Of a stretch of DNA of 64,000 nucleotides, positions 1-57,312 are shown piece by piece. The position numbers were made by a program, and so were the translations under genes. Source of the stretch: Antechinus flavipes (Eukaryota); NCBI RefSeq assembly GCF_016432865.1, contig NC_067399.1, positions 20,274,001 through 20,338,000 of the forward strand, in the 5' to 3' direction. Each line of letters opens with the position of its first letter. Position 1 is the first letter of the stretch. Under the pieces are notes generated by a model. That model was not told where the DNA came from and did not search any database. It was given only the letters and a program-made list of their open reading frames with translations.

Positions 1-1087
1 AGATGCGGCAGCTGAGGACGATTATCCCCCTCCCCCAGGGCTAGGAAGTTTCTTTATTTAAAGGCCCACAAAACAAAGTTTTTGTTTTTACTATAGTCTG
101 GCCCTCCAACAGTCTGAGGGACAGTGAACTAGCCCCCTATTTAAAAAGTTTGAGGACCCCTGCCTACAGTCTACATGCTGGGCTGTCCAGCTGCCCCTGA
201 CCTTCTCTGGAAATAGCTGAGGTGTAGGGTAAGGGGCTAGACCATGGGAAATGAGTGAACTGGGGAATGGGGAGATGAGGGGGTTTGAGGGAATATCATT
301 ATGAACTTCATGAACTTCAATAGGAACATAATGCCTCTTTATTTTCATGAAACCCGAACTCAATTTTAGCATTTCTTTCAATTATGAATGTAGAAAAAAA
401 AGCCTGCCTCTGAGGAGTTCATAGGCTTTATCCACTTGCCAAAGGGGTATCTGACACAAAGTAAGCTGAGAGCCCCTGATTTAGAGCCTTCGTTTTACAG
501 AAAAGGAAACTGAGGTTCAAGAGGAAGGGACTCGTCCACATACAGGTAGTAGGAGAGACAAAGCTGAGATCTGAATCCAAGTCCTTTGACTTAACATTGA
601 AATCATCGCTTTTTCTACTTTGGAACATCCTGACCTGGTGAAGGGGGGCCCACATCTGGAAGAGTTTGCCTTGAAGGAGGAAGGAGGAAAGGTCTTTGGC
701 AGGCAGCCCAGGAGTAAAGAAGCAGAGGCCGGGTGGGGAGAAGAGAAGGAAGAGAAGGCAAAGCTGCAGAGAGTCCCCACCTCCCACCCCCGTTGTGCTT
801 GAGAGCAGAGGAGGATGGGAAAGAAGGTGGGATGGAGGGACACTGGGAGCCCAAAAGAGGAAGAGGCTTTCTCCGAGGTCAGTAACCTTACAGAAAGTCA
901 GCCAGTGAACGAGCAAATATGAAGTGCCAATCAATCGGTAAGCATTCATTCAGCTTTTCCTCTGCCCTGGGCACTGGGTGAAGCCGTGGGAGTACAAAAA
1001 AGGCAAAAACAATTCCTGACTTTGGGGAGGTCACAGAAAAATAGGACAAGGGAGGGAAAGTGGGGGAAAGGATTGGGGAGGAATGTG

Positions 1088-1745
1088 TGAATTAGTGTGT
1101 GTGTGAGAGAGAGTGAGTGTGTATGAGAGTGAGTGTGTATGTGAGTGTGTGGTGAGTGNNNNNNNNNNNNNNNNNNNNNNNNNNNNNNNNNNNNNNNNNN
1201 NNNNNNNNNNNNNNNNNNNNNNNNNNNNNNNNNNNNNNNNNNNNNNNNNNNNNNNNNNNNNNNNNNNNNNNNNNNNNNNNNNNNNNNNNNNNNNNNNNNN
1301 NNNNNNNNNNNNNNNNNNNNNNNNNNNNNNNNNNNNNNNNNNNNNNNNNNNNNNNNNNNNNNNNNNNNNNNNNNNNNNNNNNNNNNNNNNNNNNNNNNNN
1401 NNNNNNNNNNNNNNNNNNNNNNNNNNNNNNNNNNNNNNNNNNNNNNNNNNNNNNNNNNNNNNNNNNNNNNNNNNNNNNNNNNNNNNNNNNNNNNNNNNNN
1501 NNNNNNNNNNNNNNNNNNNNNNNNNNNNNNNNNNNNNNNNNNNNNNNNNNNNNNNNNNNNNNNNNNNNNNNNNNNNNNNNNNNNNNNNNNNNNNNNNNNN
1601 NNNNNNNNNNNNNNNNNNNNNNNNNNNNNNNNNNNNNNNNNNNNNNNNNNNNNNNNNNNNNNNNNNNNNNNNNGTGAGTGTGTGGTGAGTGAATGTGTAT
1701 GTGACTGTGAGTGTGTGTGTGAGTGTGTGTGTGAGTGAGTGTGTG
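1088..1745. repeat. (GT)n/(GAGT)n microsatellite spanning an assembly gap (N 1159-1673)
   Basis: GTGAGTGTGT-type repeats on both sides of a 515-N run; the X-rich ORFs here are artefacts. Confidence 0.95.
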
Positions 1746-2049
1746 TTCTCCTGAACACACATTTGGAGGCGGCTCACTCTGTGTAAAGAGCCTTGTCCCT
1801 GGAGCAAGGGACTTAAGCACCAGCACCTCCCTTTAGGGGAGACTCAACAAATTGCTTCACTTCTGTCTCTCTCTTCCTTACTGGATTTGGACTAAATTGG
1901 GTCCTTAATCTCTGTGTATGTCTTGGACCCCTTTGGCAGGAGTCTGGTGAACCCCTGGATGGTCCCCTTATCAGAAGAATGTTTGTAAATGCAGAAAATA
2001 AAAATATTCCAGTTAGCTTTTCCTTATCTCCACTTTCCCATCACAGTTT

Positions 2050-2505
2050 CAAGATAAATAGATCTATCAATCTATCAGTATATCCATCCTTCTTTCTTTC
2101 TATCGATCTATCTATGTATCTATCAGTATATCCATCCTTCTTTCTATCAATCATTTATCTATCTATCTATCTATCAATCTATCAGTATATCTATCCTTCT
2201 TTCTTTCTATCGATCTATCAGTATATCCATCCTTCTTTCTTTCTATCGATCTATCAATCTATCAGTATATCCATCCTTCTTTCTTTCTATCTATCTATGT
2301 ATCTATCAGTATATCCATCCTTCTTTCTATCAATCATTTATCTATCTATCTATCTATCTATCTATGTATCTATCAGTATATCCATCCTTCTTTCTTTCTA
2401 TCGATCTATCAGTATATCCATCCTTCTTTCTTTCTATCGATCTATCAGTATATCCATCCTTCTTTCTTTCTATCTATCTATGTATCTATCAGTATATCCA
2501 TCCTA
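2050..2505. repeat. Compound TATC/TCTT minisatellite
   Basis: The unit ATCTATCAGTATATCCATCCTTCTTTC(TTT) recurs about 10 times, interspersed with (TATC)n. Confidence 0.9.
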
Positions 2506-3149
2506 GAAATTAAATGGGAATCTTTGGGGAGTTTTGCAGAACTTGCAGATGTCACACAAAATCTAGCAGACAACACAGAAAGAGTTTAGAGACTTAATAT
2601 ACATACATATATCTATAGTATTGTATAATATCAACATATTTTACCTTTTAGTTCCATATAATTCAGACTTTTTCTATGATACAAAAATTTGACGTGGATT
2701 TTCCAGAGTGTGGGGGTGCTGCACCCCAACCCCTGGGATGTGGAAGGAATAACCGTATATTGGAATATAGTTATTTAAGGAGTAGAAAACCAGTTCTCAG
2801 ACCACTGGTCACTCCATGGATCTCAACGTCCTTTTGTTTCCTAAATGTCCGATCCCACAAAACAGACTCCCCGGCAATGCAAAATGCACGGGCAGGAAAG
2901 AGGGAAGAGTTTTCTGAAGGCCTGAGTGTGGATCGTGTGTGATGCTACTGACACCTGACTTAGATCAAGAAGGGAAATGAGGCTGGGGGTGTATTTAGGA
3001 GAGGGGCTGTAAAAAAGCACCAGGGCCAATATCCAAAAAAAGGACCAGAGACCTTGAGAAATCACTGGGTCCAGCCCCTTATCCTCAGGAGGATTTTTCT
3101 CTGAACCATGAGTTTTTTATAGCCTGGATCTATCCATTTGTTTGTTTCT

Positions 3150-3400
3150 TGAGAGAGGCAGGTAAGTGGTCCAGTGGAAGCAAGAAGACCCGAGTTCAAA
3201 TCTGTTCAAGGACACTTACAAACTGTGTGTGGGTGAGTCACTTAATCTCTTCCTGCCTCAGTTTCCCCAGTTCTAAAATGGGGATAATGAGTGCTAGATT
3301 TGTCCTCCTGTACTTCCCAGGGCTGTTGTGAAAAGCAAATGAGACAGTATTTATAAAGCATTTAACATGGGGGTAGGCACATAGTAGGTCCTTAATAAAT
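3150..3400 (+). mobile_element. MIR/CORE-type SINE fragment
   Basis: CORE-like GTCACTTAATCTCTTCCTGCCTCAGTTTCCCCAGTTCTAAAATGGGGATAAT, followed by an AATAAATGC tail. Confidence 0.7.
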
Positions 3401-3898
3401 GCTTTTCCCCTCCCCTTTATAATATCACATATTTTATTTTATGAGTTAATTTTTTTCTGAAAAAAGGTTCCTTAGACTTCTGAAAAGGGGTCACACCAGA
3501 CTGTCCACAAGATCCAGGACCCAAAAAAAGGCTAAGAACCCTTGTTCTAAACTCTCTGGGAGAATTGTTCTTTAAGATGTTGTATAAAATATGTTCTATA
3601 CCGTAATATAAAAAGTCAGGGCTGGGTTTGCCATTGCTGGGCTCGGTAATAATTTAGAGGAGCGTAGAGTTAGAGCTGAAAGAGACATTGGGAGCCGATG
3701 TTCTCTTTTTACACCCAAGGGAATTGAGTCTCAAAGAAATAAAAGACTTGCTGGGTGCTAACAAGTCTGGCACCCTAGGTACTAGAAACCTCTGGGTACA
3801 AAAACAAATTAAAAATCCATCCTCCAGACTCTTGCTTCCGTATCCCAGCTACCTTCTCTTGGTGAGATGGGAGGGGACGGGGGTCCACAGTGGCTCAC

Positions 3899-3992
3899 CT
3901 GGAGGCGTCAGCTTGACGTGCTGGTGAGCTGCATTGAAGTGAGCCCCTGAGCTGGTGAGCTCGCTCTCCTCCTTCACGGGCTGATCCCCCAT
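3899..3992 (-). CDS. First coding exon of a probable type II transmembrane C-type lectin (CD207/langerin- or CLEC4F-like cytoplasmic tail): MGDQPVKEESELTSSGAHFNAAHQHVKLTPP(G)
   Basis: ATG in strong context (GACATGG). 94 nt = 31 codons + 1, ending at a consensus donor G|GTGAGC. TATAAA lies 88 nt upstream. The AHF-x4-Q-x-V-x-L-x-P pattern is in register with human CD207 AHFTVDKQNISLWPR and CLEC4F RFCTDNQCVSLHPQ (recalled from memory). Downstream exons were not securely found. Confidence 0.55.
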
Positions 3993-4079
3993 GTCCGGCC
4001 TATCATCCAAGTGCAATCCTTCGAGAGATTTTTGTCCAGAGAGAACAAGGGGAAATAAAACTAGTGTAATTCTGGGGCC

Positions 4080-4085
4080 TTTATA
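4080..4085 (-). promoter_or_regulatory. TATA box of the minus-strand lectin gene
   Basis: The minus strand reads CCACCTATAAAGGCCCC upstream of the ATG at 3992. Confidence 0.55.
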
Positions 4086-5289
4086 GGTGGATGACCTGGC
4101 TCTGTCCCAATTTACCCCTAAGCCCTCAGTTCTTTTGACTCAGCAGAACTGGTCAGCAGCCATTGGATTAGGTTGACGTTCTAACTTGGGGGCTCTCAGT
4201 TCTTCACCAGCCCCTGTACCCGAGAGGAACCCTGTTCTCTGCCTCAGAACTCTGCTTAAGCTCCGTCCAGATGTCCATCGTTAATCCTGGCCAGAGACTG
4301 ACAGCCCCAGTAGAGCTTCTCTCTGACCCTGACCTCAGTCCCCCTTGGGCAAGTGCCCTGAGAGCCTGAAGCTGAGGCAGAGAAACCTGAAGGGCTTGGG
4401 AGGGACCTGAACAAGAACCCCTGCACTTGTAGCTTTTGCTTGAGGACTGCCAGTGAGCGAGGAGCCCATCGGGGTGACAAGGGTGAAGCATTTTGTGGTA
4501 GTGGGAAAGTGCCAGACTCCCAACCTCATTGTCATCCTGGACTCCTCATTCCCATCCACTCCATCTTTCCATGTTATTGTCAAGTCCTCATTGGGTGACA
4601 TGGTGGGGTTGGGGCAGGGCCAAGGACCGGAGAGTCTGAATTTGGATTCTGCCTTGGCTGACTTAATATAGTGACCGTCATTTGTCTCTGCTTGAGCTTC
4701 CTCTTGCAGTAAAAGGGGTCAGAGCAAACCTGAAGGGCCTGGAGTTTTAGGGTCCCTCCAGCTCTTCAGCCTCCATGAAAGAGGGCAATTGGACGAGCTG
4801 GCCCTCTGAGAAGCTCTGAAAGTGGGACGGGGGAAGGAAAGGGGGAAAGGGAAGCTCCTCAAGGAGGATCTGGATGGAAGGGACGCTTCCACATGGGCGC
4901 CGGGCGTCTGCAGGAGAGTCAGTGAAAGGGGGGAAATGCTGACCTTAACTTTCCGTTTCTCATACCCCTTCCACCCCCCCTCCTTCTTATTCCTGGAGGG
5001 GAAATTCTGAGGCAGGACCTCAGGGAGTATTCCATTTAAAATGGAACACAGTATTACTGCACTTCTGTGGTACTTTCCTGTTCTACAGAAGAAATGAGAT
5101 CAGGCAGGAAGGAGCCTCCAGAAGGGAGAGGATGGTAAAATTTAGCACAGGAAGAATGGGGGAGACCACCTAGTATAATCATAGTTCCCTGTCCTCCTCT
5201 CAGGCTTTTTTTTTGGCTGGATCACCGTCTATGTTTTGTCCTTTTATGTGTATCTGCCTTGGAATTCTATCCTGGATTCTTTCTTCCCC

Positions 5290-5715
5290 TCCCCTTCTCT
5301 CCTCCTCTCCTCTCTTCTCCTCTCCTTTCCTCTCCTCTCCTCTTCTCTTTCCTTCTCTTCCCCTCTCTTGCCTTCTCTTCTCCCTGTCTTTCTTCTTGTT
5401 TCTTCTCTTCCTTCTCTTTTCTTTTTTCTCATTTCTTCTATTCATTCTCTTCTCTTTCCTCTTTTCCTTATTTTTCTTTTTTTTCTATTTTTCTCCTTCT
5501 TTTCTCTTTTCTTCTCTACTCTTTTTCTTGTTTCTTTTCTTCTCTTCCTTCTTTTTTCTCTTTTCTCATTTCTTCTCTTCTCTTTCTCCTCTTCTTTTTC
5601 CTCTTCTCTTCTCTTCCTTCTTCTTCTCTTCCCTTCCTTCTTTTTTATTTCTTCTTGCTTCTTCTCTTTTCTTTCTTTTCTTCCTTCTTTTCTCTTTCTC
5701 ATCTTCTCTTTCTCT
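5290..5715. repeat. CT-rich low-complexity tract
   Basis: Almost purely C/T; source of the F/L/S-rich and K/R/E-rich spurious ORFs. Confidence 0.95.
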
Positions 5716-6287
5716 ATAGTTTCTGGTGACTCCATCAGCTCTTATGAATCAATTATTATCTATATGCAGAAGATTTCTAGCCCTCACCTGTTTCCTGATG
5801 TCCAATTCCATAACTCCAACTGCCCACAGGATACCTGCACCTGGATGTCCCATAGACAACAAAGCCTCAACTTACCTAAAATAGAATTAATTATATCCCC
5901 TATTCCCTCCCCCAATACACTTTTCTGTTGCTGTGAAAGTTTCTACCTTTCTTTCACTGACTCAGGTTGTCAACCTCCTGATATCCTCAGTTTCTCACTT
6001 TTACTAGTCATCATCCCAAGCCTTCTACCCCTTCCCCAGAATGTGACCTCTCCACTCTCATCATTATCCTACAATTCAGGTTCACATTATTCCCTGCCTA
6101 GATTAATGTTGGTTCTTTAATCCATCCTCCACAAAGCAGCCAGTTTTTGTCTAAAGCAAAAATTAGATTGTGCACTTTTCTGCTCAAGAAGCTTCAATGA
6201 TTCCCTGTCATCTCTAGGATAAGCTATGAACTTCTCAAGCTTCTGAGGAAGTGAATTGGGAAAGCAAGTCAGGAAGGCTGAATTCAG

Positions 6288-6289
<2 letters not shown>

Positions 6290-6365
<76 letters not shown>

Positions 6366-6366
6366 T
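6290..6366. repeat. (CT)n(GT)n microsatellite
   Basis: A pure CT run followed directly by a GT run. Confidence 0.97.
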
Positions 6367-6644
6367 ATTAGAAGGTTCCTAGCTGCAAATTTTTCTGTTT
6401 GCCTCAGTTTCCTCATTTGTAATGATGATAATAATATCTACCTCCCAAGGTGGTTGTGAAGAGTAAATGATGTATTTGGCACACAATAGGCGCTTAATAA
6501 ATAGGTAATGAATTGGAATGAAATTGACCCTTCCATCTTACAGAGCATGAATTATAATGGAAAGGACTCTTGATTTGGAGGAAAAGGATTTGGGCTGTGT
6601 TGCTATATGACCTTGGGCAAATTACTAATAATAGACTCAAATAA

Positions 6645-7876
6645 TTTACCTGTCACATTTATGGAGAAGGGAAGAATCTATGACCAAACAAGAGATAGAG
6701 AACATGATGAAATACAAAATGGATAATTTTGAGTATATTAAAAAGTTTTTGCACAAACAGAGCCAATGCAACCAAGATTATAAGAGAAGCAGAAAGCTGG
6801 GAAACAATTTTTGCAACCAGTGTTTATGATAAATATCTCATTTCTAAAATATGTAGAGAAGTCAAATTTATAAGAATACAAGTCATTCACCAGTTGATAA
6901 ATGGTCAAAGGATGTGAACAGGCAGTTTCAGATGAAGAAATCAAATCCATCTGTGATCATATAAAAAAGCTCTAAAAGCTATTGATGAGAGAAATGCAAA
7001 TTAAAACATCTCTGATCTATCACTTCATATCTATCAGACTATACAACAGAAAAGGAAAAATGGCAAATATTGGAGAGGCTTGGGGGAAAATTGGAAAATA
7101 AATACATTATTGGTGGAGTTGTGAACTGATTCAACCAAAGTAAAAAATAATTTCAAACTATGTCCTCCCAAATTATTTAAAAACATACATGTCCTTTGAG
7201 CCGGAAATCTCACTATTAGGTCTGTATACCAAAGAGGTCCCAAAAAAGGGAAAAGGACCCACATGTACAAACACGTTTATAACAGCTCTCTTTCTAGTAG
7301 CAAGGAACTGGAAATCAAGGAGATTTCCATCAAGTGACAAATGGCTGAACAAGTTGTGGTATATTAATGTAATACTCTTATTGTTCTATAAGAAATAATG
7401 ATCGGGTAGATTTCAAAAAACCTGGAAAGACTTACATGAACTGGTGCAGAGTGAAGTGAGCAGAACCAGGAGAACATTGTACACAGCAACAGCAAGGTTA
7501 TGTGACGATCAACAATGAGAGACTTGTTCTCAGCAGTAATTCTAGACAATTCCAAAAGATTCATGATTGAAAATGTCATCCACATCCAGAGAAAGAACTA
7601 TGGAGTCTGAAACGCAGATGGAAACATACAATTTTCGTTTGTTGTGTGTGTGTTTTTTTCCCTTTCTTGTGGTTTTTCTTTTTTGTTCTGATTTTTCTTT
7701 TACAACAGGACTAACGTGAAAATATGTTTAATATGATTGTAAATGTAGTTTAAATCATGTTGCTTGCTGTCCTGGAGAGGGGGGAGGAGAGGGAAGAAGG
7801 GAGAAAAAATGGAAATCAAAATCTCAAAAGTAAATGATGAAAACTTTTAAAAATAAATAAATAAGAATATAAAAAA
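6645..7876 (+). mobile_element. Degenerate LINE-1 3' fragment (end of ORF2 plus 3' UTR)
   Basis: Decayed similarity to the C-terminus of the intact L1 ORF2 at 54805-57312 (e.g. KGPTCTNTFITALFLVARNWK); ends in an A-rich tail. Confidence 0.85.
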
Positions 7877-8988
7877 GTCCAAAAGTATTTCAACATCTCT
7901 GTGACCTTATTACTGCAGACACAAGTGAATATCCACATGGGGACAAGAAGAGGATGTCACTAAGTCCCTATGATAGCCTCATCTCAGCCATGGCATTGGC
8001 TGATACCTATAATCACTAAAATCATAATTTACCAAGTGTTTGGATTAGCTCAGAGTGTAATGTTGGAGGTGGCCACCAGGTGGAATTCTACTCGAATTAT
8101 TCATCTAAGTACCAAGTGAGTCAGACTTTGGGATCCCATTGGGGGTTTTCTTGGCAAAGACACTGAAGTGATTTGCCATTTCCTTCTCTAGCCCATTTTA
8201 CAGATGAGTAAATTGAGGCGAACAGGATTGAGTGATAATAGCACCAATTAGCATAACCACCAGAGCTGTCACGAGGAGCTAATGAAATAGTATTTGCAAA
8301 GCACTTGCATGAAGATCTCCCTTCTTAGCCGATGCCTCTCCCTTCCTATGAGGTAGCTGGGGGGTCTGAAGTTAAGAGGATCTGAGTTCAAATCTGGTCA
8401 CAGATATTTAATTAGCTCAGACACTCAGTTTCTTCAGCTGTAAAATGGGGAGAACTTGTAGAGGAAAGTTTAACTCAATGTCAAGAAAAACTCCCCAAAG
8501 CTTAGATTTATTTCAAAATGGAGTCAGTTTCCTAGGGAGGAAGTAGGTCCCCCCTCATTGGATGTCTTCCAGCAGAGGCAAGCTGAAAAGGGACTCTTGT
8601 TGGGGTTCAGGGACCGCGGTCCCTCGTGCCTCTGAAATGCTGACGTTGACAACATGAAGCAAGAGTCGGAAAGCCCAGAGCACGATGGAGATAGGTAACG
8701 GGGGGCGATGACACTAAATGTGAAGGTTCTGGGATCTCCTCTGTCACTGCTTCCTGCTGCCCCTTTCCCTCTGGGATCCACTGCCCCGGCTTCTCCTCCC
8801 TCCTCCTCCTTTCTCCGCTCAGCTCTCGGGTCCCTGTGTACGCACTCGCCTTGGGTGCACCTTGTTCCCTGGCCGTGGGAAAGGAACAGCTGAGTGCCTT
8901 GGGGACGAGACCCTCCTGAGCTCCTCACTGGGAGAATCATGACCTGGCTCTGCTGGGAAGCGAGGGCTCTCCTGCCAGCACCTCCCCT

Positions 8989-8997
8989 TTCTGGGAA
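8989..8997 (+). promoter_or_regulatory. STAT/GAS element (TTCTGGGAA) in the REG-A promoter
   Basis: TTCN3GAA about 90 bp upstream of the TATA box; several CTGGGA hexamers lie nearby. Confidence 0.55.
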
Positions 8998-9084
8998 GAG
9001 ACGGTCCTCACTCACGGCCATCCCTTCCTCCCCTTTCCATTCCCTCCTCTTTTATTCCTGCCCCAGACTCCCACCTCTGCCCCC

Positions 9085-9138
9085 TATAAAGGCTCATGTA
9101 GGCCCCTGCGGGACATATTGATCCAGACCAGCCAGAGG
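9085..9138 (+). promoter_or_regulatory. REG-A TATA box (9085-9090) and non-coding exon 1 (ends 9138)
   Basis: CCTATAAAGG, then donor G|GTAAGT at 9139; same layout as the five paralogues. Confidence 0.85.
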
Positions 9139-9501: not shown

Positions 9502-11576
9502 ATGTTGCCCTCCAGCCTCTCCAAGTGGCTCTTCTACTGCCTGCTGCTCCCAGATCTGGTCCTGGGTGAGTCACCCCTGTCCAGGGTGCATGTCCCCGGC
9601 ATCCCGCTGTGTGACCTTAGATAAAGCCCCTCTCTCTCTGATCCTACTCCCCAGAGAGGGGAGAAGTCCGACCGCATGGGTGGGATTCCTTCTGATCCCA
9701 CCTGCCTCCCATAGCAAGACCCCGGGTTTCTCACTTTGCTTCTTTTATCCGACTTGCCCTCAGGCCAGATTACCAAATGGATCACTCCTCCCCAGATCTC
9801 CTGCCCAGAAGGATCCAAGATCTATGGCTCCCACTGCTACGCAGTATTCCAGGAACCCCAAACCTGGACCGCTGCAGAGGTGCTTGGTTATAGGCCACCC
9901 GGTATGGGTTTGCAGGGGAGGCGTGTTTGCCATTTGATTTCAGGGCTCCTTGGGTCGATGCCACGGGATGGGAACGGGACTGCACCTTCATTGCCCCCTA
10001 AGCTGACCCAGACGTCACTCGTGCTTTCCCCCTCCCACCTGGATCCTCAATCCTCCCCCAGCAGCAACCCCCCCCCCCCGTGGCTCTCCCTGGGTCAGTT
10101 TCCCTGTCTGTAAGGAGAGACCCTCCCCAAGTGCCTCAGTCCTTGCCTTTTCTGATAGCGCTCCCTTCCTCCCCTGCCCTCTCACTGCAGACCCTCCCTG
10201 GGCAGCATAGCCTTTACCCCCTACAATGTCCCTTCTCCTCTTTTCCTCAGCTGAAGTGTCAAATGCTGACCTCCGGCCATCTCCTGTCCTTGATGAATGA
10301 GTCCGAAGCCTCCTTTGCGGCCGCTCTGGCCACCCAGAGTCTCGGACACAACCGGAGTTACCTCTGGATCGGCCTTCACGACCCCTCCCAGGTTTTTCCA
10401 CTCCCCCACCCCCCACCCCCCAGTCCATCTCCTCTGTCTGAATTCTGGGGCTGAGGGGGTGGAAGGGGAAATAGGGGGAGGAGAGAGCTATGGAGAAGAG
10501 AAGTCCACTCTTGCCTCCCCATCCCCACGATCAGTTTTCTTACCTATCCTCAGTCTTCCCCTTGCAGCCATCCATGCAGAGACCCATTCTTAAACACAAA
10601 TCATTTCTCTGAGAGGAGAGGGGAATGGAAATGCATGGGCCGCCTCCAGCCCCCTTCACTCAACTAGAGGCTGGGAAGGGTCAGAGTATAAGGAAGAACT
10701 CAGAGGTCCTGGGTTCCAATCCCAGCTTTGCCCGTGTGATTTGGGGCAAGTTCCAAAAGTGTGTAAAGGGAGGGGGTAGCTTAGGTGACCTTTCAACTTG
10801 GAATCAATGATAATAATGATAGCTAGCATTGACAACCACTTTAAGGTTTGCACAGTGCTTTCTGTACTGTGCTCAATAAGCTCCTTACAACAGCCTTTGG
10901 AGGGAGGGGCCACCATGATCGCTGTTTTAGAGATGGGGAAACTGAGGCAGACAGAAGCCGAATGTTTGTGCAAAGCAACATAGCTGGGACGATTGAAGCA
11001 GGAATCAGATCCGGTTCTTTCGGGCCCAGCATTCTCCCCACTATGTTTATGGTGATACTCTTTGTTGGGTGATTTCTAGGGGGGATTTTTACACAGACGC
11101 GGGTGGAACTCAATGTCTTCTGAGGTTCCTTCCAATACTGAGCAGCCTCTGGCCTTCCCCAGAACCGCCGCTGGCACTGGAGCGACAATGCCATGCTTAC
11201 CTTAAATACCTGGGAGAAAGGAGCCCCCGCGAAAACCACCCTCAGGTTCTGCGTGAGTCTGTCCCCACGCTCAGGTGAGAGAGGAAAACCCTTCTCTTCA
11301 GTCCTATCTCCATCCCTGCCCGAGTCAAGCGGGACCTCGGGGAGCCGGGGCTGCCCTCTTCCTCTTGCTCTTTTCTTCTTTTATTCCCCTCTCTCCTCAA
11401 TTCTTTCTTTTCCAGGCCATAAATCCCTATCTCACCTATGGGGTTGGGCAGCTCCTGCCTGAGCTCAGAGCCTACAGTGGAGACTTTTCCTTTTCTTTTT
11501 GTCTTCAGAGTACCTACTGTGGAAGGATCAACACTGCAACGAGGAGCTTCCCTTTATCTGCAAGTTCTCAGTCTAG
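9502..11576 (+). CDS. REG-A: REG-family (REG1/lithostathine-like, REG3-related) secreted C-type lectin, 166 aa
   Basis: Exons 9502-9565, 9764-9879, 10251-10391, 11163-11274, 11509-11576 (64+116+141+112+68 = 501 nt), all GT-AG and open. Protein: MLPSSLSKWLFYCLLLPDLVLG-QITKWITPPQISCPEGSKIYGSHCY...WIGLHDPSQNRRWHWSD...FCVSL...WKDQHCNEELPFICKFSV. Signal peptide plus six CTLD Cys. AATAAA at 12042. Confidence 0.93.
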
Positions 11577-12089: not shown

Positions 12090-13420
12090 ATAAAAAAAGA
12101 TATTCTTAAAAAAAAACTTTTTAAAATGGTATTTTATTTTTTCCCCCAATTCCATGTCAAGACAATTTTTAGCATTCAGTTTTACAAGATTTTGACTTCC
12201 AAATTTCTCTCTCTCTTTCCTGATAGGCAATTCGATTGAGGTCATACATGTGAGGTCATGTAAAATATATTTTTAAAATAGTCACCATTATGAAAGAAGA
12301 AACAGAGTAAAAGGGAAAAAATCATGAAGAAGAATAACATTAGTTAAAAAAAAAGTATAGTTCAATCTGCATTCACAATCCATCATTCTTTATCCTGAAT
12401 GGCATTTTCTTTCATGAATTCTTTGTAGTTGTGGATCATTGTGTAGCTGAGAAGAGCTTGAGTCATTAATAGTTGATCCTCTTACAATGTTTTTGATACT
12501 GTATATAAAATTTTCCTGATTCTACTCATTCCCTTTACATCAGTTTGTATAAGTCTTTCCATTTTTTTCTGAAACCTTCCTGCTTTTTCTTTCTTTCTTT
12601 TAAAAATAATAATAGCTTTTTATTTTTCAAAATTCATGCAAAGATAGTTTTCAACATTCACCCTTACAAAACTTTGTGTTCCAGATTTTTCTCTCTCTTT
12701 CCTCCACTCCCCTAGACAGCAACCAATCCAATATAGGTTAAACATGTACAATTCCTCTAAACATATTTCCACATTTGTCATTTTGTGCAAAAAAAATAAG
12801 CTCAAAATGGAGAAAAAACATAAGAAAAAACAAGCAAACAGCAACAACAAAGATGAAAATACAATGCTTTGATCAGTCTCCATACTTCTCTCTCTGGATG
12901 CAGATGACATTTTCCATCACAAGTCTATGGAATTGTCCTGAATCACCTCATTATTGAAAAGAGCCACGTCCATCATGCTCACAATCATCTCACAATCTTG
13001 TTGCTGTGTACAATGATCTCCTGGTTCTGCTCATTTCACTCAGCATCAGTTCATGTCAGTCTCTCCAGGCCTCCCTGAAATCATCCTAGTGATCATTTCT
13101 TACAGAACAATAATATTCCTTAACATTCATATACCACAATTTATTCATCCACTGATGGGCATCCACTCCCTTTCCAGTTTCTGGCCACTACAAAGAGACC
13201 TGCTACAAACGTTTTTGCACATGGGGGTCCCTTTTCCCTCCTTTAAGATCTCTTTGGGATACAGACCCAATAAGAGACACTGCTGGATCAAAGGGTCTGC
13301 ACAGTTTGATCTCCCTTTGGGCACAGTTCCAACTGCTCTCCATGATGTTTGGATCGGTTCACAACTCTACCAACAATGTTCCAGTTTTCCCACATCCCCT
13401 CCAACATTTATCATTATGGA
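12090..13420 (-). mobile_element. Two adjacent degenerate LINE-1 3' ends (about 12090-12600 and 12620-13420)
   Basis: T-rich tails on +; 3' UTR and ORF2-end motifs (CTGGTTCTGCTCATTTCACTCAGCATCAGTTCATG) shared with the other L1 copies in the window. Confidence 0.8.
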
Positions 13421-43794: not shown

Positions 43795-44630
43795 ATCTCA
43801 TTTCTTTGTTTCAAGATAATTATCTTTCTATTTTCAAAATATACGCAAAGCTAGTTTTCAACACCCACCTTTGCAATGCGTAGTGTTCTCCCTCTCTTCC
43901 CCTCATCCTTCCCTTGGACAACAAGAGTCCAATATATTAAATGTGCAATTATTTTATAAAGATTTTCACAAGTATCATGCTGAACAAGAAAAATCAGACT
44001 AAAAAGGGAAAAAATGAGAGAAAACAAAAAGCAAGCAAACAGCAAAAAAAAGACGAAAATATTAAGCTATGTTCCACCTTCAATCTCCCTACTCCCGTCT
44101 CTGGCAGTGGATGGCTCTCTCCATCATAAATCTATTAGAATTGCTTTTAGTCGCTTCATCTTGAAAAGAGCCAACTCCATCACAGTTGATTACACAATCT
44201 TGTTGTTGCTGTGGACAATATTCTCTTGATTCTACTCATTTCACTTAGCATCAGTTCCTATAAGTCTCTCCAGATCTTTCTGAAATCATCCTGTTGATCG
44301 TTTCTCATAGAACAATAATATTCCATAATGTTCATATGCCATAATTTATTCAGCCATTCTCCAGCTGATGGGCATCCCCTCAGTTTCCAGTTTCTAGCCA
44401 GTAGAAAAAGGGCTGCCACAAACATTTTTGCCCTTGTGGGACCCTTTTCCTTTTTATGATCTTTAGGGGTACCAGCCCAGTGGAGATACAGCTGGATCGA
44501 AGGGCATGCCCAATGTGATCGCTCTTGGGCATAGTTCCAAATTGCTCTCTAGAACAGTTGGGTCATTTCCACCAACAATGTATTAGTGTCCTAGTTTTCC
44601 CACATGCCCTCCAACGTTTATAATTATCTC
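43795..44630 (-). mobile_element. Degenerate LINE-1 3' end
   Basis: Same 3' UTR and ORF2-end motifs as the other L1 copies. Confidence 0.8.
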
Positions 44631-54459: not shown

Positions 54460-57312
54460 TTTTTTTTTTAAATTTTTATTTAATAATTACTTTATATTGA
54501 CACTCGTTTCTGTTCCAATTTTTTTCCCTCCCTCCCTCCACCCCCTCCCCTAGATGGCAAGCAGTCCTTTATGTGTTGGATATGTTGCAGTATATCCTAG
54601 AGAGAATATATGTTTGCAGAACCGAACAGTTCTCTTGTTGCATAGGGAGAATTGGATTCAGAAGGTATAAATAACCCGGGAAGAAAAACAAAAATGCAGA
54701 TAGTTCACATTCGTTTCCCAGTGTTCTTTCTTTAGGTGTAGCTGCTTTTGTCTGTCATTTATCAATTGAAACTCAGATCTCTTTGTCAAAGAAATCCCCT
54801 TCCATCAAAATATGTCCTCATACAATATCGTTGTCGAAGTGTATAATGATCTCCTGGTTCTGCTCATTTCACTTAGCATCAGTTCATGTAAGTCTCGCCA
54901 GTCCTCTCTGTATTCATCCTGGTGGTCATTTCTTACAGAACAATAATATTCCATAACATTCATATACCATAATTTACCCAGCCATTCTCCAATTGATGGG
55001 CATCCATTCATTTTCCAGTTTCTAGCCACTACAAACAGGGCTGCTACAAACATTTTGGCACATACAGGTCCCTTCCCCTTCTTTAGTATTTCTTTGGGAT
55101 ATAAGCCCAATAGAAACACTGCTGGATCAAAGGGTATGCACAATTTGATAATTTTTTGGGCATAATTCCAGATTGCTCTCCAGAATGGTTGGATTCGTTC
55201 ACAACTCCACCAACAATGCAATAGTGTCCCAATTTTCCCGCATCCCCTCCAACATTCATCATTATTTTTTCCTGTCATCTTAGCCAATCTGACAGGTGTG
55301 TAGTGGTATCTCAGAGTTGTCTTAATTTGCATTTCTCTGATTAATAATGATTTGGAACACTCTTTCATATGAGTGGTAATAGTTTCAATTTCATCCTCTG
55401 AGAATTGTCTGTTCATATCCTTTGACCATTTATCAATTGGAGAATGGCTTGATTTCTTATAAATTTGAGTCAGTTCTCTATATATTTTGGAAATGAGGCC
55501 TTTATCAGAACCTTTAACTGTGAAAATGTTTTCCCAGTTTGTTGCTTCCCTTCTAATCTTGTTTGCATTAGTTTTATTTGTACAAAGGCTTTTTAATTTG
55601 ATGTAATCGAAATTTTCTATTTTGTGATCAGTAATGGTCTCTAGTTCATCTTTGGTCACAAATTTCTTTCTCCTCCACAAGTCTGAGAGATAAACTATTC
55701 TATGTTCCTCTAATTTATTTATAATCTCGTTCTTTATGCCTAGGTCATAGACCCATTTTGATCTTATCTTGGTATATGGTGTTAAGTGTGGGTCCATGCC
55801 TAATTTCTGCCATACTAATTTCCAATTATCCCAGCAGTTTTTATCAAATAATGAATTCTTTTCCCAGAAGTTAGGGGCTTTGGGTTTGTCAAACACTAGA
55901 TTGCTATAATTGACTATTCTGTCTTGTGAACCTAGCCTTTTCCACTGATCCACTAATCTATTTCTTAGCCAATACCAAATGGTTTTGGTGACTGCTGCTT
56001 TATAATATAATTTTAGATCAGGTACAGCTAGGCCACCTTCATTTGATTTTTTTTTCATTAATTCCCTTGAGATTCTCGACTTTTTATTGTTCCATATGAA
56101 TTTTGTTGTTATTTTTTCTAGATCAATAAAATATTTTCTTGGAAGTCTGATTGGTATAGCACTAAATAAATAGATTAGTTTAGGGAGTATTGTCATCTTT
56201 ATTATGTTCGCTCGGCCGGTCCAAGAGCACTTAATATTTTTCCAATTATTTAAGTCTGACTTTATTTGTGTGGAGACTTTTTTATAATTTTGCTCATATA
56301 ATTCCTGACTTTCCTTTGGTAGATAGATTCCCAAATATTTTATGGTATCAACAGTTATTCTGAATGGAATTTCTCTTTGTATCTCTTGCTGTTGGGTTTT
56401 GTTGGTGATATATAAAAATGCTGAGGATTTATGGGGATTTATTTTGTAGCCAGCTACTTTGCTAAAATTATGAATTATTTCCAATAGCTTTTTAGTGGAA
56501 TCTCTGGGGTTCTCTAGGTATACCATCATATCATCTGCAAAGAGTGATAGTTTGGTTTCCTCATTGCCTACTCTAATTCCTTTAATTTCTTTCTCGACTC
56601 TTATTGCCGAGGCTAGTGTTTCTAATACGATATTAAATAATAATGGTGATAGTGGGCAACCTTGCTTCACTCCAGATCTTACTGGGAAAGGTTCCAGTTT
56701 TTCCCCATTGCATATGATGCTTACTGATGGTTTTAAATATATGCTCCTGACTATTTTAAGGAAAAGTCCATTTATTCCTATGCTCTCAAGTGTTTTTATT
56801 AGGAATGGATGTTGGATTTTATCAAATGCTTTTTCTGCATCTATTGAGATGATCATATGGTTTTTATTTGTTTGGTTATTGATATAGTCAATTATGCTAA
56901 TAGTTTTCCTAATATTGAACCAGCCCTGCATTCCTGGTATAAATCCTACTTGGTCATAGTGTATTATCCTGGTGATGATTTTCTGTAATCTTTTTGCTAA
57001 TATTTTATTTAAGATTTTAGCATCAATATTCATTAGGGAGATTGGTCTATAATTTTCTTTCTCTGTTTTCGGCCTACCTGGTTTAGGTATCAGTACCATG
57101 TCTGTGTCATAAAAGGAGTTTGGTAGGACTCCTTCAATCCCTATTTTTTCAAATAGTTTATATAACATTGGAGTTAATTGTTCTTTAAATGTTTGGTAGA
57201 ATTCACATGTAAATCCATCTGGTCCTGGGGATTTTTTCTTAGGGAGTTGATTGATAGTTTGTTCTATTTCTTTTTCTGAGATGGGACTGTTTAGGATATT
57301 TACTTCTTCCTC
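54460..57312 (-). mobile_element. Young 5'-truncated LINE-1 (2853 nt) with a 15-bp TSD
   Basis: GGCCAGAGAAGGTTT at 54445-59 and 57313-27; poly(T) at the left end; empty site at 45404-18 followed by AAAA, giving an endonuclease-type TT|AAAC site. Confidence 0.97.
54805..57312 (-). CDS. LINE-1 ORF2p fragment (RT plus C-terminal Cys-rich domain), 835 uninterrupted codons
   Basis: [56 protein letters not shown]. The frame stays open from the truncation point (57312) past the ORF-track start (57168) to the stop. Confidence 0.93.

What the first reader, a model, noticed from the sequence alone, without database searches (positions are those of the whole stretch)
3899..4085. Hidden langerin/CLEC4F-like gene start, head-to-head with the REG cluster
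Seen: a minus-strand TATAAA (4080-85), a strong-context ATG (3992), a 94-nt phase-1 exon and a consensus GTGAGC donor. The exon is too short for the ORF track. There is also a weak, out-of-frame upstream ATG (4006; 10-codon uORF overlapping the start). Knowledge (recalled): the peptide aligns in register with the first exons of human CD207 and CLEC4F, which lie on the same arm (2p) as the human REG cluster but megabases away. Inference: here a membrane C-type lectin receptor and the secreted REG lectins sit 5 kb apart and are divergently transcribed. This may be an ancestral or marsupial-specific compact lectin locus with a shared regulatory interval.
Basis: partly seen in the sequence, partly recalled or inferred. 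Interest (0 to 1): 0.7.

Follow-up and report, generated by a model that had tools for sequence, protein, structure and literature searches.

The report
First exon of antechinus CLEC4F-like lectin
The short stretch is the real promoter and first coding exon of a marsupial relative of the Kupffer-cell sugar receptor CLEC4F, pointing away from the neighbouring REG lectin genes; it is an ordinary member of a known gene family in an unusual neighbourhood.

Summary
They are the TATAAA (4085-4080), the strong-context ATG (3992), a 94-nt phase-1 exon, the GTGAGC donor (3898-3893) and an overlapping 10-codon uORF (from 4006). This combination occurs once in the window; about 0.03 are expected by chance.

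The 31-residue peptide hit exactly one of 1.84 billion representative proteins. It matches residues 1-31 of a 597-aa protein of the fat-tailed dunnart, another dasyurid (XP_074141676.1, "uncharacterized LOC141554048"), with 27/31 identical and E 7e-8. That protein is a type II membrane lectin with a long coiled-coil neck and a galactose-type (QPD) C-type lectin domain. Its closest relatives are eutherian CLEC4F, then langerin. So the exon encodes the cytoplasmic tail of a long-necked CLEC4F-type gene, not langerin proper.

The first REG gene starts 5,000 bp away on the other strand, so the head-to-head layout is real.

Not shown:
- No TM, neck or lectin-domain exon lies in the readable 3.9 kb left in the window.
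- No RNA evidence could be obtained.
- Nothing supports a shared regulatory interval.
- Synteny in other species could not be tested.

This is a new member of a known kind, of modest interest.

The parts
4080..4085 (-). TATA box (TATAAA) of the CLEC4F-like gene
   Evidence: Read directly. It is part of a composite found once in the window against 0.03 expected. Function is inferred.
4052..4058 (-). Initiator-like TTATTTC. The predicted transcription start is the A at 4056, placing the first T of the TATA box at -29.
   Evidence: Read directly. This is inference from canonical TATA-Inr spacing, with no RNA evidence.
3993..4056 (-). Predicted 5' UTR, about 64 nt
   Evidence: Inference from the TATA/Inr position and the ATG.
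3974..4006 (-). Out-of-frame uORF: a weak-context ATG, 10 codons and a stop. It overlaps the main ATG.
   Evidence: Read directly. Whether it lies within the transcript depends on the predicted start site.
3899..3992 (-). Coding exon 1 (94 nt, phase 1). It encodes the 31-residue cytoplasmic tail plus the first base of a G-starting codon.
   Evidence: Translation. It matches residues 1-31 of XP_074141676.1 at 27/31, E 7e-8, among 1.84 billion proteins. Local tblastn gives 3992-3897, E 2e-12. The columns invariant across CLEC4F N-termini (F19, Q24, V26, L28) are all kept.
3893..3898 (-). Splice donor GTGAGC, after CAG
   Evidence: Read directly. The boundary falls just before the invariant Gly32 of the family alignment.
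1..3892 (-). Intron 1 (incomplete). It holds a MIR-like SINE near 3180-3420, a tandem repeat at 2062-2504, an N gap at 1159-1673 flanked by CA-type microsatellites, a CT-rich stretch at 640-870 and a SINE-like stretch at 440-620.
   Evidence: tblastn with the dunnart protein finds no further exon here.
4086..9084 (.). Intergenic interval between the two divergent TATA boxes
   Evidence: CpG observed/expected is at most 0.39 throughout. It contains CT-rich repeats at 5285-5715, (TC)n at 6290-6348, and an interspersed repeat at 6640-7845 with copies elsewhere in the window.
9085..9090 (+). TATA box of the first REG gene, whose signal-peptide ATG is at 9502
   Evidence: REG-type lectin exons follow on the + strand.

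Best explanation
Window 4085-3893 (minus strand) holds the TATA-type core promoter, a short 5' UTR and the first coding exon of the yellow-footed antechinus ortholog of the dasyurid long-necked CLEC4F-like gene (dunnart LOC141554048).

Shown:
- The exon encodes the 31-residue cytoplasmic tail of a type II membrane lectin.
- It ends in phase 1 at a consensus donor, just before the conserved glycine that opens the transmembrane exon in the family.

Inferred from the dunnart ortholog and from published work on CLEC4F:
- The full product is a single-pass type II protein with a TM helix around residues 46-64.
- It has a roughly 400-residue heptad-repeat neck that forms a trimer.
- It has a C-terminal calcium-dependent lectin domain with QPD...W, and so binds galactose/GalNAc.
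- It probably acts as an endocytic or clearance receptor on liver macrophages or other myeloid cells.

The remaining exons lie in the N gap or, more likely, beyond the left edge of the window. The gene is transcribed away from the REG cluster, whose first gene starts 5 kb off on the other strand from its own TATA promoter. The two promoters are most likely independent.
For: - The sequence features are all present, and the composite pattern is unique in the window.
- One hit only among 1.84 billion representatives: an N-terminus to N-terminus match, 1-31 to 1-31, 87% identity, E 7e-8. The hit is XP_074141676.1 of Sminthopsis crassicaudata.
- That protein has Lectin_C at 481-589, a TM helix at 46-64, QPD at 553 and WND at 574.
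- Its best full-length relatives are all named CLEC4F, E 1e-84 to 1e-88.
- Its best solved structure is the CLEC4F CRD 6jjj, at 198 bits against 165 for langerin.
- The exon peptide aligns in register with eutherian CLEC4F N-termini and keeps the invariant columns F19, Q24, V26 and L28. Its split codon starts with G, where the family has invariant G32.
- In rat CLEC4f the cytoplasmic domain is a single exon, exon 1 (PMC6422238).
- REG-A has its TATA at 9085 and its ATG at 9502 on the + strand.
Against: - No TM, neck or lectin-domain exon lies in the readable 3.9 kb downstream, so the gene's integrity in antechinus is unproven.
- No antechinus protein with this N-terminus was found in the word-search collection at 328-1045 aa or at 30-96 aa. 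That is as expected for an unannotated gene, but also for a broken one.
- Only 31 residues are compared. Four replacements across dasyurid subfamilies is compatible with constraint but does not prove it.
Confidence: 0.82

Rival explanations
1. The exon is a relic. The promoter and first exon survive, but the rest of the antechinus gene is deleted, broken or pseudogenised, so no receptor is made.
For: - No downstream exon in 1-3898.
- No antechinus product with this N-terminus, and no other dasyurid ortholog besides the dunnart's, in the protein collections.
- CLEC4F has been lost or disabled in other lineages, such as humans (PMC6422238).
Against: - The ATG, reading frame, donor, TATA box and all family-invariant residues are intact.
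- The last 15 residues are identical to the dunnart protein.
- The missing exons are explained simply by the window ending 3.9 kb downstream and by a 515-N gap.
Confidence: 0.13
2. It is the first exon of true langerin (CD207), not of a CLEC4F-type gene.
For: - The peptide shares AHF...Q..[VI].L.P with human langerin's N-terminus, as seen in PDB chain 7wz8_C.
- CD207 and CLEC4F are tandem neighbours with similar tails (PMC6422238).
Against: - The only significant match is to the 597-aa long-necked QPD protein at 87% identity.
- That protein is closer to CLEC4F than to langerin over its full length and in the CRD.
- The langerin N-terminal match scores only 5 bits.
Confidence: 0.03
3. The two lectin genes share a bidirectional or common regulatory interval.
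For: Only the divergent orientation and the 5-kb spacing.
Against: - Each gene has its own TATA box.
- The spacing is five times the usual limit of about 1 kb for bidirectional promoters (established knowledge).
- There is no CpG island, with observed/expected at most 0.39.
- Much of the interval is microsatellite and interspersed repeat.
- In eutherians REG genes are gut and pancreas genes, while CLEC4F is a macrophage gene (established knowledge).
Confidence: 0.05
4. It is a chance ORF with chance signals.
For: The exon is short, and the signals are individually common (69 TATAAA in the window).
Against: - E 7e-8 against 1.84 billion proteins, with an exact N-terminus to N-terminus match.
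- The composite is expected 0.03 times per window.
Confidence: 0.01

Closest known systems
Sminthopsis crassicaudata LOC141554048 (XP_074141676.1), an NCBI-predicted 'uncharacterized protein' of 597 aa
   Same: The first 31 residues are 87% identical to the exon's product, and both start at the same methionine. The glycine at position 32 fits the split G-starting codon.
   Different: It comes from a different dasyurid subfamily. There are four replacements (V6L, S10R, L12P, G16R). The rest of the antechinus gene was not seen, so its neck length and CRD are inferred.
Eutherian CLEC4F (Kupffer cell receptor; rat, mouse, cattle; PDB 6jjj)
   Same: The architecture of the dunnart ortholog is the same: a cytoplasmic tail encoded by exon 1, a TM helix, a long heptad neck and a QPD-type CRD (PMC6422238). 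The N-terminal motif HF...Q.V.L.P.G is in register.
   Different: Overall identity is only 33-37%. Eutherian CLEC4F lies next to CD207, and the eutherian REG cluster is flanked by LRRTM4 and CTNNA2 (PMC6422238; PMC9650133). Here the gene abuts the REG cluster. Earlier scan notes report a second, short-necked CLEC4F-type gene beyond the far end of this window; I did not check this.
Langerin (CD207 / CLEC4K)
   Same: It is the sister gene of CLEC4F and has a similar cytoplasmic-tail motif (AHF...Q.I.L.P), a trimeric neck and a related CRD (PMC6422238).
   Different: Langerin has a short neck and an EPN (mannose-type) site. The ortholog of this exon has a long neck and QPD.

Membership tests
CLEC4F (Kupffer cell receptor) type | Exon 1 encodes the N-terminal cytoplasmic domain of a type II protein, with the family's conserved tail motif | tested here: met
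   The peptide matches 1-31 to 1-31 with the dunnart CLEC4F-like protein. It keeps F19, Q24, V26 and L28, and the G-starting codon at 32. In rat, exon 1 is the cytoplasmic domain (PMC6422238).
CLEC4F (Kupffer cell receptor) type | A transmembrane exon following exon 1 | tested here: inconclusive
   tblastn of P0001 finds nothing in 1-3898. The window ends 3.9 kb downstream and has a 515-N gap. The feature is present in the dunnart ortholog (TM 46-64).
CLEC4F (Kupffer cell receptor) type | A long heptad-repeat coiled-coil neck | not testable with these tools
   It would lie outside the window. It was seen only in the ortholog P0001, which gives coiled-coil family hits over 111-470.
CLEC4F (Kupffer cell receptor) type | A C-terminal C-type CRD with the QPD galactose-type site | not testable with these tools
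   It would lie outside the window. The ortholog P0001 has Lectin_C at 481-589, QPDNW at 553 and WND at 574, and its best PDB match is the CLEC4F CRD.
CLEC4F (Kupffer cell receptor) type | Tandem neighbour of CD207 | not testable with these tools
Langerin (CD207) | A short neck and an EPN mannose-type CRD | tested here: not met
   This was tested on the ortholog only. P0001 is 597 aa with QPD and no EPN, and it is closer to CLEC4F than to langerin.
Bidirectional promoter pair | Divergent start sites less than about 1 kb apart, usually CpG-rich and TATA-less | tested here: not met
   The TATA boxes are at 4085 (-) and 9085 (+), 5,000 bp apart. CpG observed/expected is at most 0.39 across the interval.

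The most novel reading that the evidence does not exclude
In dasyurid marsupials the REG cluster may sit inside the CLEC4F/CD207 lectin block. The long-necked CLEC4F-type gene lies on one side (this finding). According to earlier scan notes, a short-necked CLEC4F-type gene lies beyond the far end of this window. In eutherians the two blocks are megabases apart, and REG is flanked by LRRTM4 and CTNNA2. If opossum and monotremes share the compact layout, it would be the ancestral therian arrangement, later split in eutherians. It would then offer a natural case for asking whether membrane and secreted C-type lectin genes were ever co-regulated.
Probability: 0.2. Interest if true: 0.4.

Novelty: new member of a known kind. 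Interest (0 to 1): 0.3.

Why it matters
The finding places the start of a CLEC4F-type receptor gene in the antechinus genome. The protein collections searched hold no antechinus product with this N-terminus. That would help a correct annotation of marsupial myeloid lectins.

It also shows that in this dasyurid the CLEC4F-type gene directly abuts the REG cluster, a neighbourhood not seen in eutherians. That is a useful synteny marker for reconstructing rearrangements of this chromosome region.

It does not reveal a new kind of gene or mechanism.

Tried and rejected
- **Downstream exons by eye.** I looked for a TM exon in three-frame translations of 1-3898. Hydrophobic-looking stretches at 3065-2990 and 870-640 turned out to be a polypyrimidine tract and CT-rich low complexity without a credible TM. 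SINE-like repeats explain the other open frames.
- **Downstream exons by search.** tblastn with the dunnart protein confirmed that no further exon is present.
- **Pfam** on the exon peptide and on the 55-aa ORF: no family, as expected for a cytoplasmic tail.
- **PDB search** with the peptide alone: no hit. A six-protein profile gave only a weak in-register match to langerin's tail.
- **Word search** with the 55-aa ORF for short fragments or partial transcripts: no candidates.
- **Word search** with residues 1-80 of the dunnart protein: only the protein itself.
- **RNA evidence.** The run search listed six holders, none on record as RNA. After that I sent no query holding those places to any search tool. 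The local tblastn did use the whole window file as its subject, inside the closed script machine. Later scripts were restricted to 3500 and above.
- **Literature.** No paper joins CLEC4F with marsupials.
- **Left out on purpose.** The N gap was not filled.

Full report
**Observation**

- TATAAA at 4085-4080.
- ATG at 3992-3990, with G at -3 and G at +4.
- An open frame of 31 codons plus one base, running to 3899.
- The donor CAG|GTGAGC at 3898-3893.
- An upstream ATG at 4006 in weak context (T at -3, A at +4). It opens a 10-codon out-of-frame uORF that stops at 3976-3974, past the main ATG.

The exon translates to MGDQPVKEESELTSSGAHFNAAHQHVKLTPP.

I scanned both strands of the window for the composite pattern: TATAAA, then a Kozak ATG within 50-160 nt, then an ORF of at least 60 nt ending in AGGTRAG. 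Only this site was found. Simulated sequence of the same first-order composition gives 0.03 per window. The pattern was defined after the fact, so I treat this as indicative only.

An initiator-like TTATTTC lies at 4058-4052. Its A at 4056 places the first T of the TATA box at -29, which predicts a 5' UTR of about 64 nt that would contain the uORF. This is inference from the sequence.

**What it is**

Pfam has nothing for the peptide, as expected for a cytoplasmic tail. The word-index protein search cannot see proteins much longer than its query.

Among 1.84 billion representatives there was exactly one hit with E at or below 0.001. It is P0001, 597 aa, matched 1-31 to 1-31 at 87% identity, E 7.1e-8. 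P0001 is XP_074141676.1, "uncharacterized protein LOC141554048", of Sminthopsis crassicaudata. Earlier notes of this scan name the window's genome as the yellow-footed antechinus, also a dasyurid.

Features of P0001:
- Residue 32 is Gly, which fits the G that the phase-1 exon leaves for the next codon.
- Its most hydrophobic segment is residues 46-64.
- Coiled-coil family matches cover about 111-470, and Lectin_C covers 481-589.
- It has QPDNW at 553 and WND at 574, and no EPN.

Relatives of P0001:
- Its full-length relatives in the 5.8-billion collection are all named CLEC4F: bats, gundi and macaque, at 33-37% identity and E 1e-66 to 1e-88.
- Among solved structures, the CLEC4F CRD 6jjj scores 198 bits and the best langerin chain 165 bits.

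Taylor et al. 2019 (PMC6422238) describe CLEC4f as follows:
- The neck is a trimeric heptad-repeat coiled coil.
- The sugar-binding site is QPD.
- The gene is always next to CD207.

The exon here therefore corresponds to CLEC4f exon 1.

**Register with the family**

I aligned the exon peptide with the first 90 residues of P0001-P0006. It lines up as KEESELTSSGAHFNAAHQHVKLTPP against, for example, MKAAEMSGDQVHFCTDNQTVSLHPQ, followed by G in every sequence. In the full alignment A1 the invariant N-terminal columns are F19, Q24, V26, L28 and G32. The antechinus exon keeps the first four, and it supplies the G of the codon for the fifth.

A profile of A1 aligns human full-length langerin (PDB chain 7wz8_C) in the same register: AHFTVDKQNISLWPRE. 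That stretch scores only 5 bits, so on its own it is not significant.

For langerin the alignment is in the same register, but that short match is not significant by itself.

**What is not in the window**

Local tblastn of P0001 against the window finds only exon 1 (3992-3897, E 2e-12). It finds nothing credible in 1-3898. That region consists of:
- a MIR-like SINE near 3180-3420;
- a tandem repeat at 2062-2504;
- a 515-N gap at 1159-1673, flanked on both sides by CA-type microsatellites;
- a CT-rich low-complexity stretch;
- another SINE-like stretch.

Exon 2 is therefore in the gap or, more likely, left of the window, so intron 1 is at least 2.2 kb and probably more than 3.9 kb.

**Expression and annotation**

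The run search returned six holders of the stretch, none on record as RNA. After that I sent no query holding those places to any search tool. The local tblastn used the whole window file as its subject, inside the closed script machine.

No antechinus protein carrying this N-terminus is in the collections at 328-1045 aa or at 30-96 aa. The exhaustive search found no separate representative either. This fits an unannotated or mis-modelled gene, but it does not exclude a broken one.

I built and searched no joined model; only the single exon was used, by reference.

**Neighbourhood**

WIGL-type lectin exons lie on the + strand at 10365, 16317, 23427, 32027 and 47581.

The first REG gene has:
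- TATAAA at 9085;
- a signal peptide starting at 9502 (MLPSSLSKWLFYCLLLPDLVLG);
- typical REG exons after it.

The two TATA boxes are 5,000 bp apart and point away from each other.

The interval between them has no CpG island (observed/expected at most 0.39). It holds 430 bp of CT-rich repeat, a (TC)n run, and a 1.2-kb interspersed repeat with copies elsewhere in the window. This is not the anatomy of a bidirectional promoter, and I see no evidence for shared control.

In human and dog the REG cluster is flanked by LRRTM4 and CTNNA2 (PMC9650133), and CLEC4F sits next to CD207 (PMC6422238). So the CLEC4F-REG adjacency differs from the eutherian layout.

Earlier scan notes report a short-necked CLEC4F-type gene about 34 kb beyond the window's far end. 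They also say that marsupials have a true langerin and a second, long-necked copy. I did not test those notes. However, P0001 is a long-necked copy of that kind, and this exon belongs to its antechinus counterpart.

**Mechanism**

Shown: a TATA-type promoter layout, and a conserved first exon encoding the cytoplasmic tail.

Inferred from the ortholog and from work on rodent and bovine CLEC4F:
- The product is a trimeric type II receptor.
- Its QPD...W site binds galactose/GalNAc in a calcium-dependent way.
- It is probably expressed on liver macrophages or other myeloid cells, for uptake of glycoconjugates or pathogens.

The weak uORF would be bypassed mostly by leaky scanning, and any regulatory role for it is speculative.

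**Constraint**

There are four replacements in 31 residues between two dasyurid subfamilies, and the last 15 residues are identical. That suggests purifying selection. Without the dunnart DNA I could not compare it with the neutral rate.

**Verdict**

The gene-start reading is supported and refined: this is the long-necked CLEC4F type, not langerin. The head-to-head layout with REG is confirmed. The shared-regulation idea and the ancestral-locus idea are, respectively, unsupported and untested.

This is a new member of a known kind, of modest interest, mainly for annotation and for synteny.

Noticed in passing
window 4136-4145 and 4162-4166, minus strand: A TGCTGAGTCA (MARE/AP-1-type consensus) lies about 80 nt upstream of the predicted start of the CLEC4F-like gene, and a CCAAT pentamer about 110 nt upstream. 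Single motif matches of this length are common by chance.
   Followed up: no
window 1084-1151, 1159-1673 and 1674-1746: The 515-N stretch is flanked on both sides by CA/GT-type microsatellite. It probably stands for an unresolved simple repeat and not for unique sequence with an exon. It was not filled.
   Followed up: no
window 4085 and 9085: The TATAAA boxes of the CLEC4F-like gene (minus strand) and the first REG gene (plus strand) are exactly 5,000 bp apart. I take the round number for coincidence.
   Followed up: no
window 6640-7845: An interspersed repeat in the intergenic interval has diverged copies (69-76% identity) at about 54839-55699, 12646-13415 and 43938-44455, in both orientations. 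It is probably a LINE fragment.
   Followed up: partly
protein collections: Apart from the dunnart protein, no marsupial ortholog of the long-necked CLEC4F-like protein turned up at 328-1045 aa, not even from the Tasmanian devil or opossum. Either the gene is often missed or mis-modelled in marsupial annotations, or it is missing or broken in several species.
   Followed up: partly
window 2062-2504: A 440-bp compound tandem repeat (periods 4, 36 and 183) in intron 1 gives long open frames on both strands, which are artefacts of the repeat.
   Followed up: no
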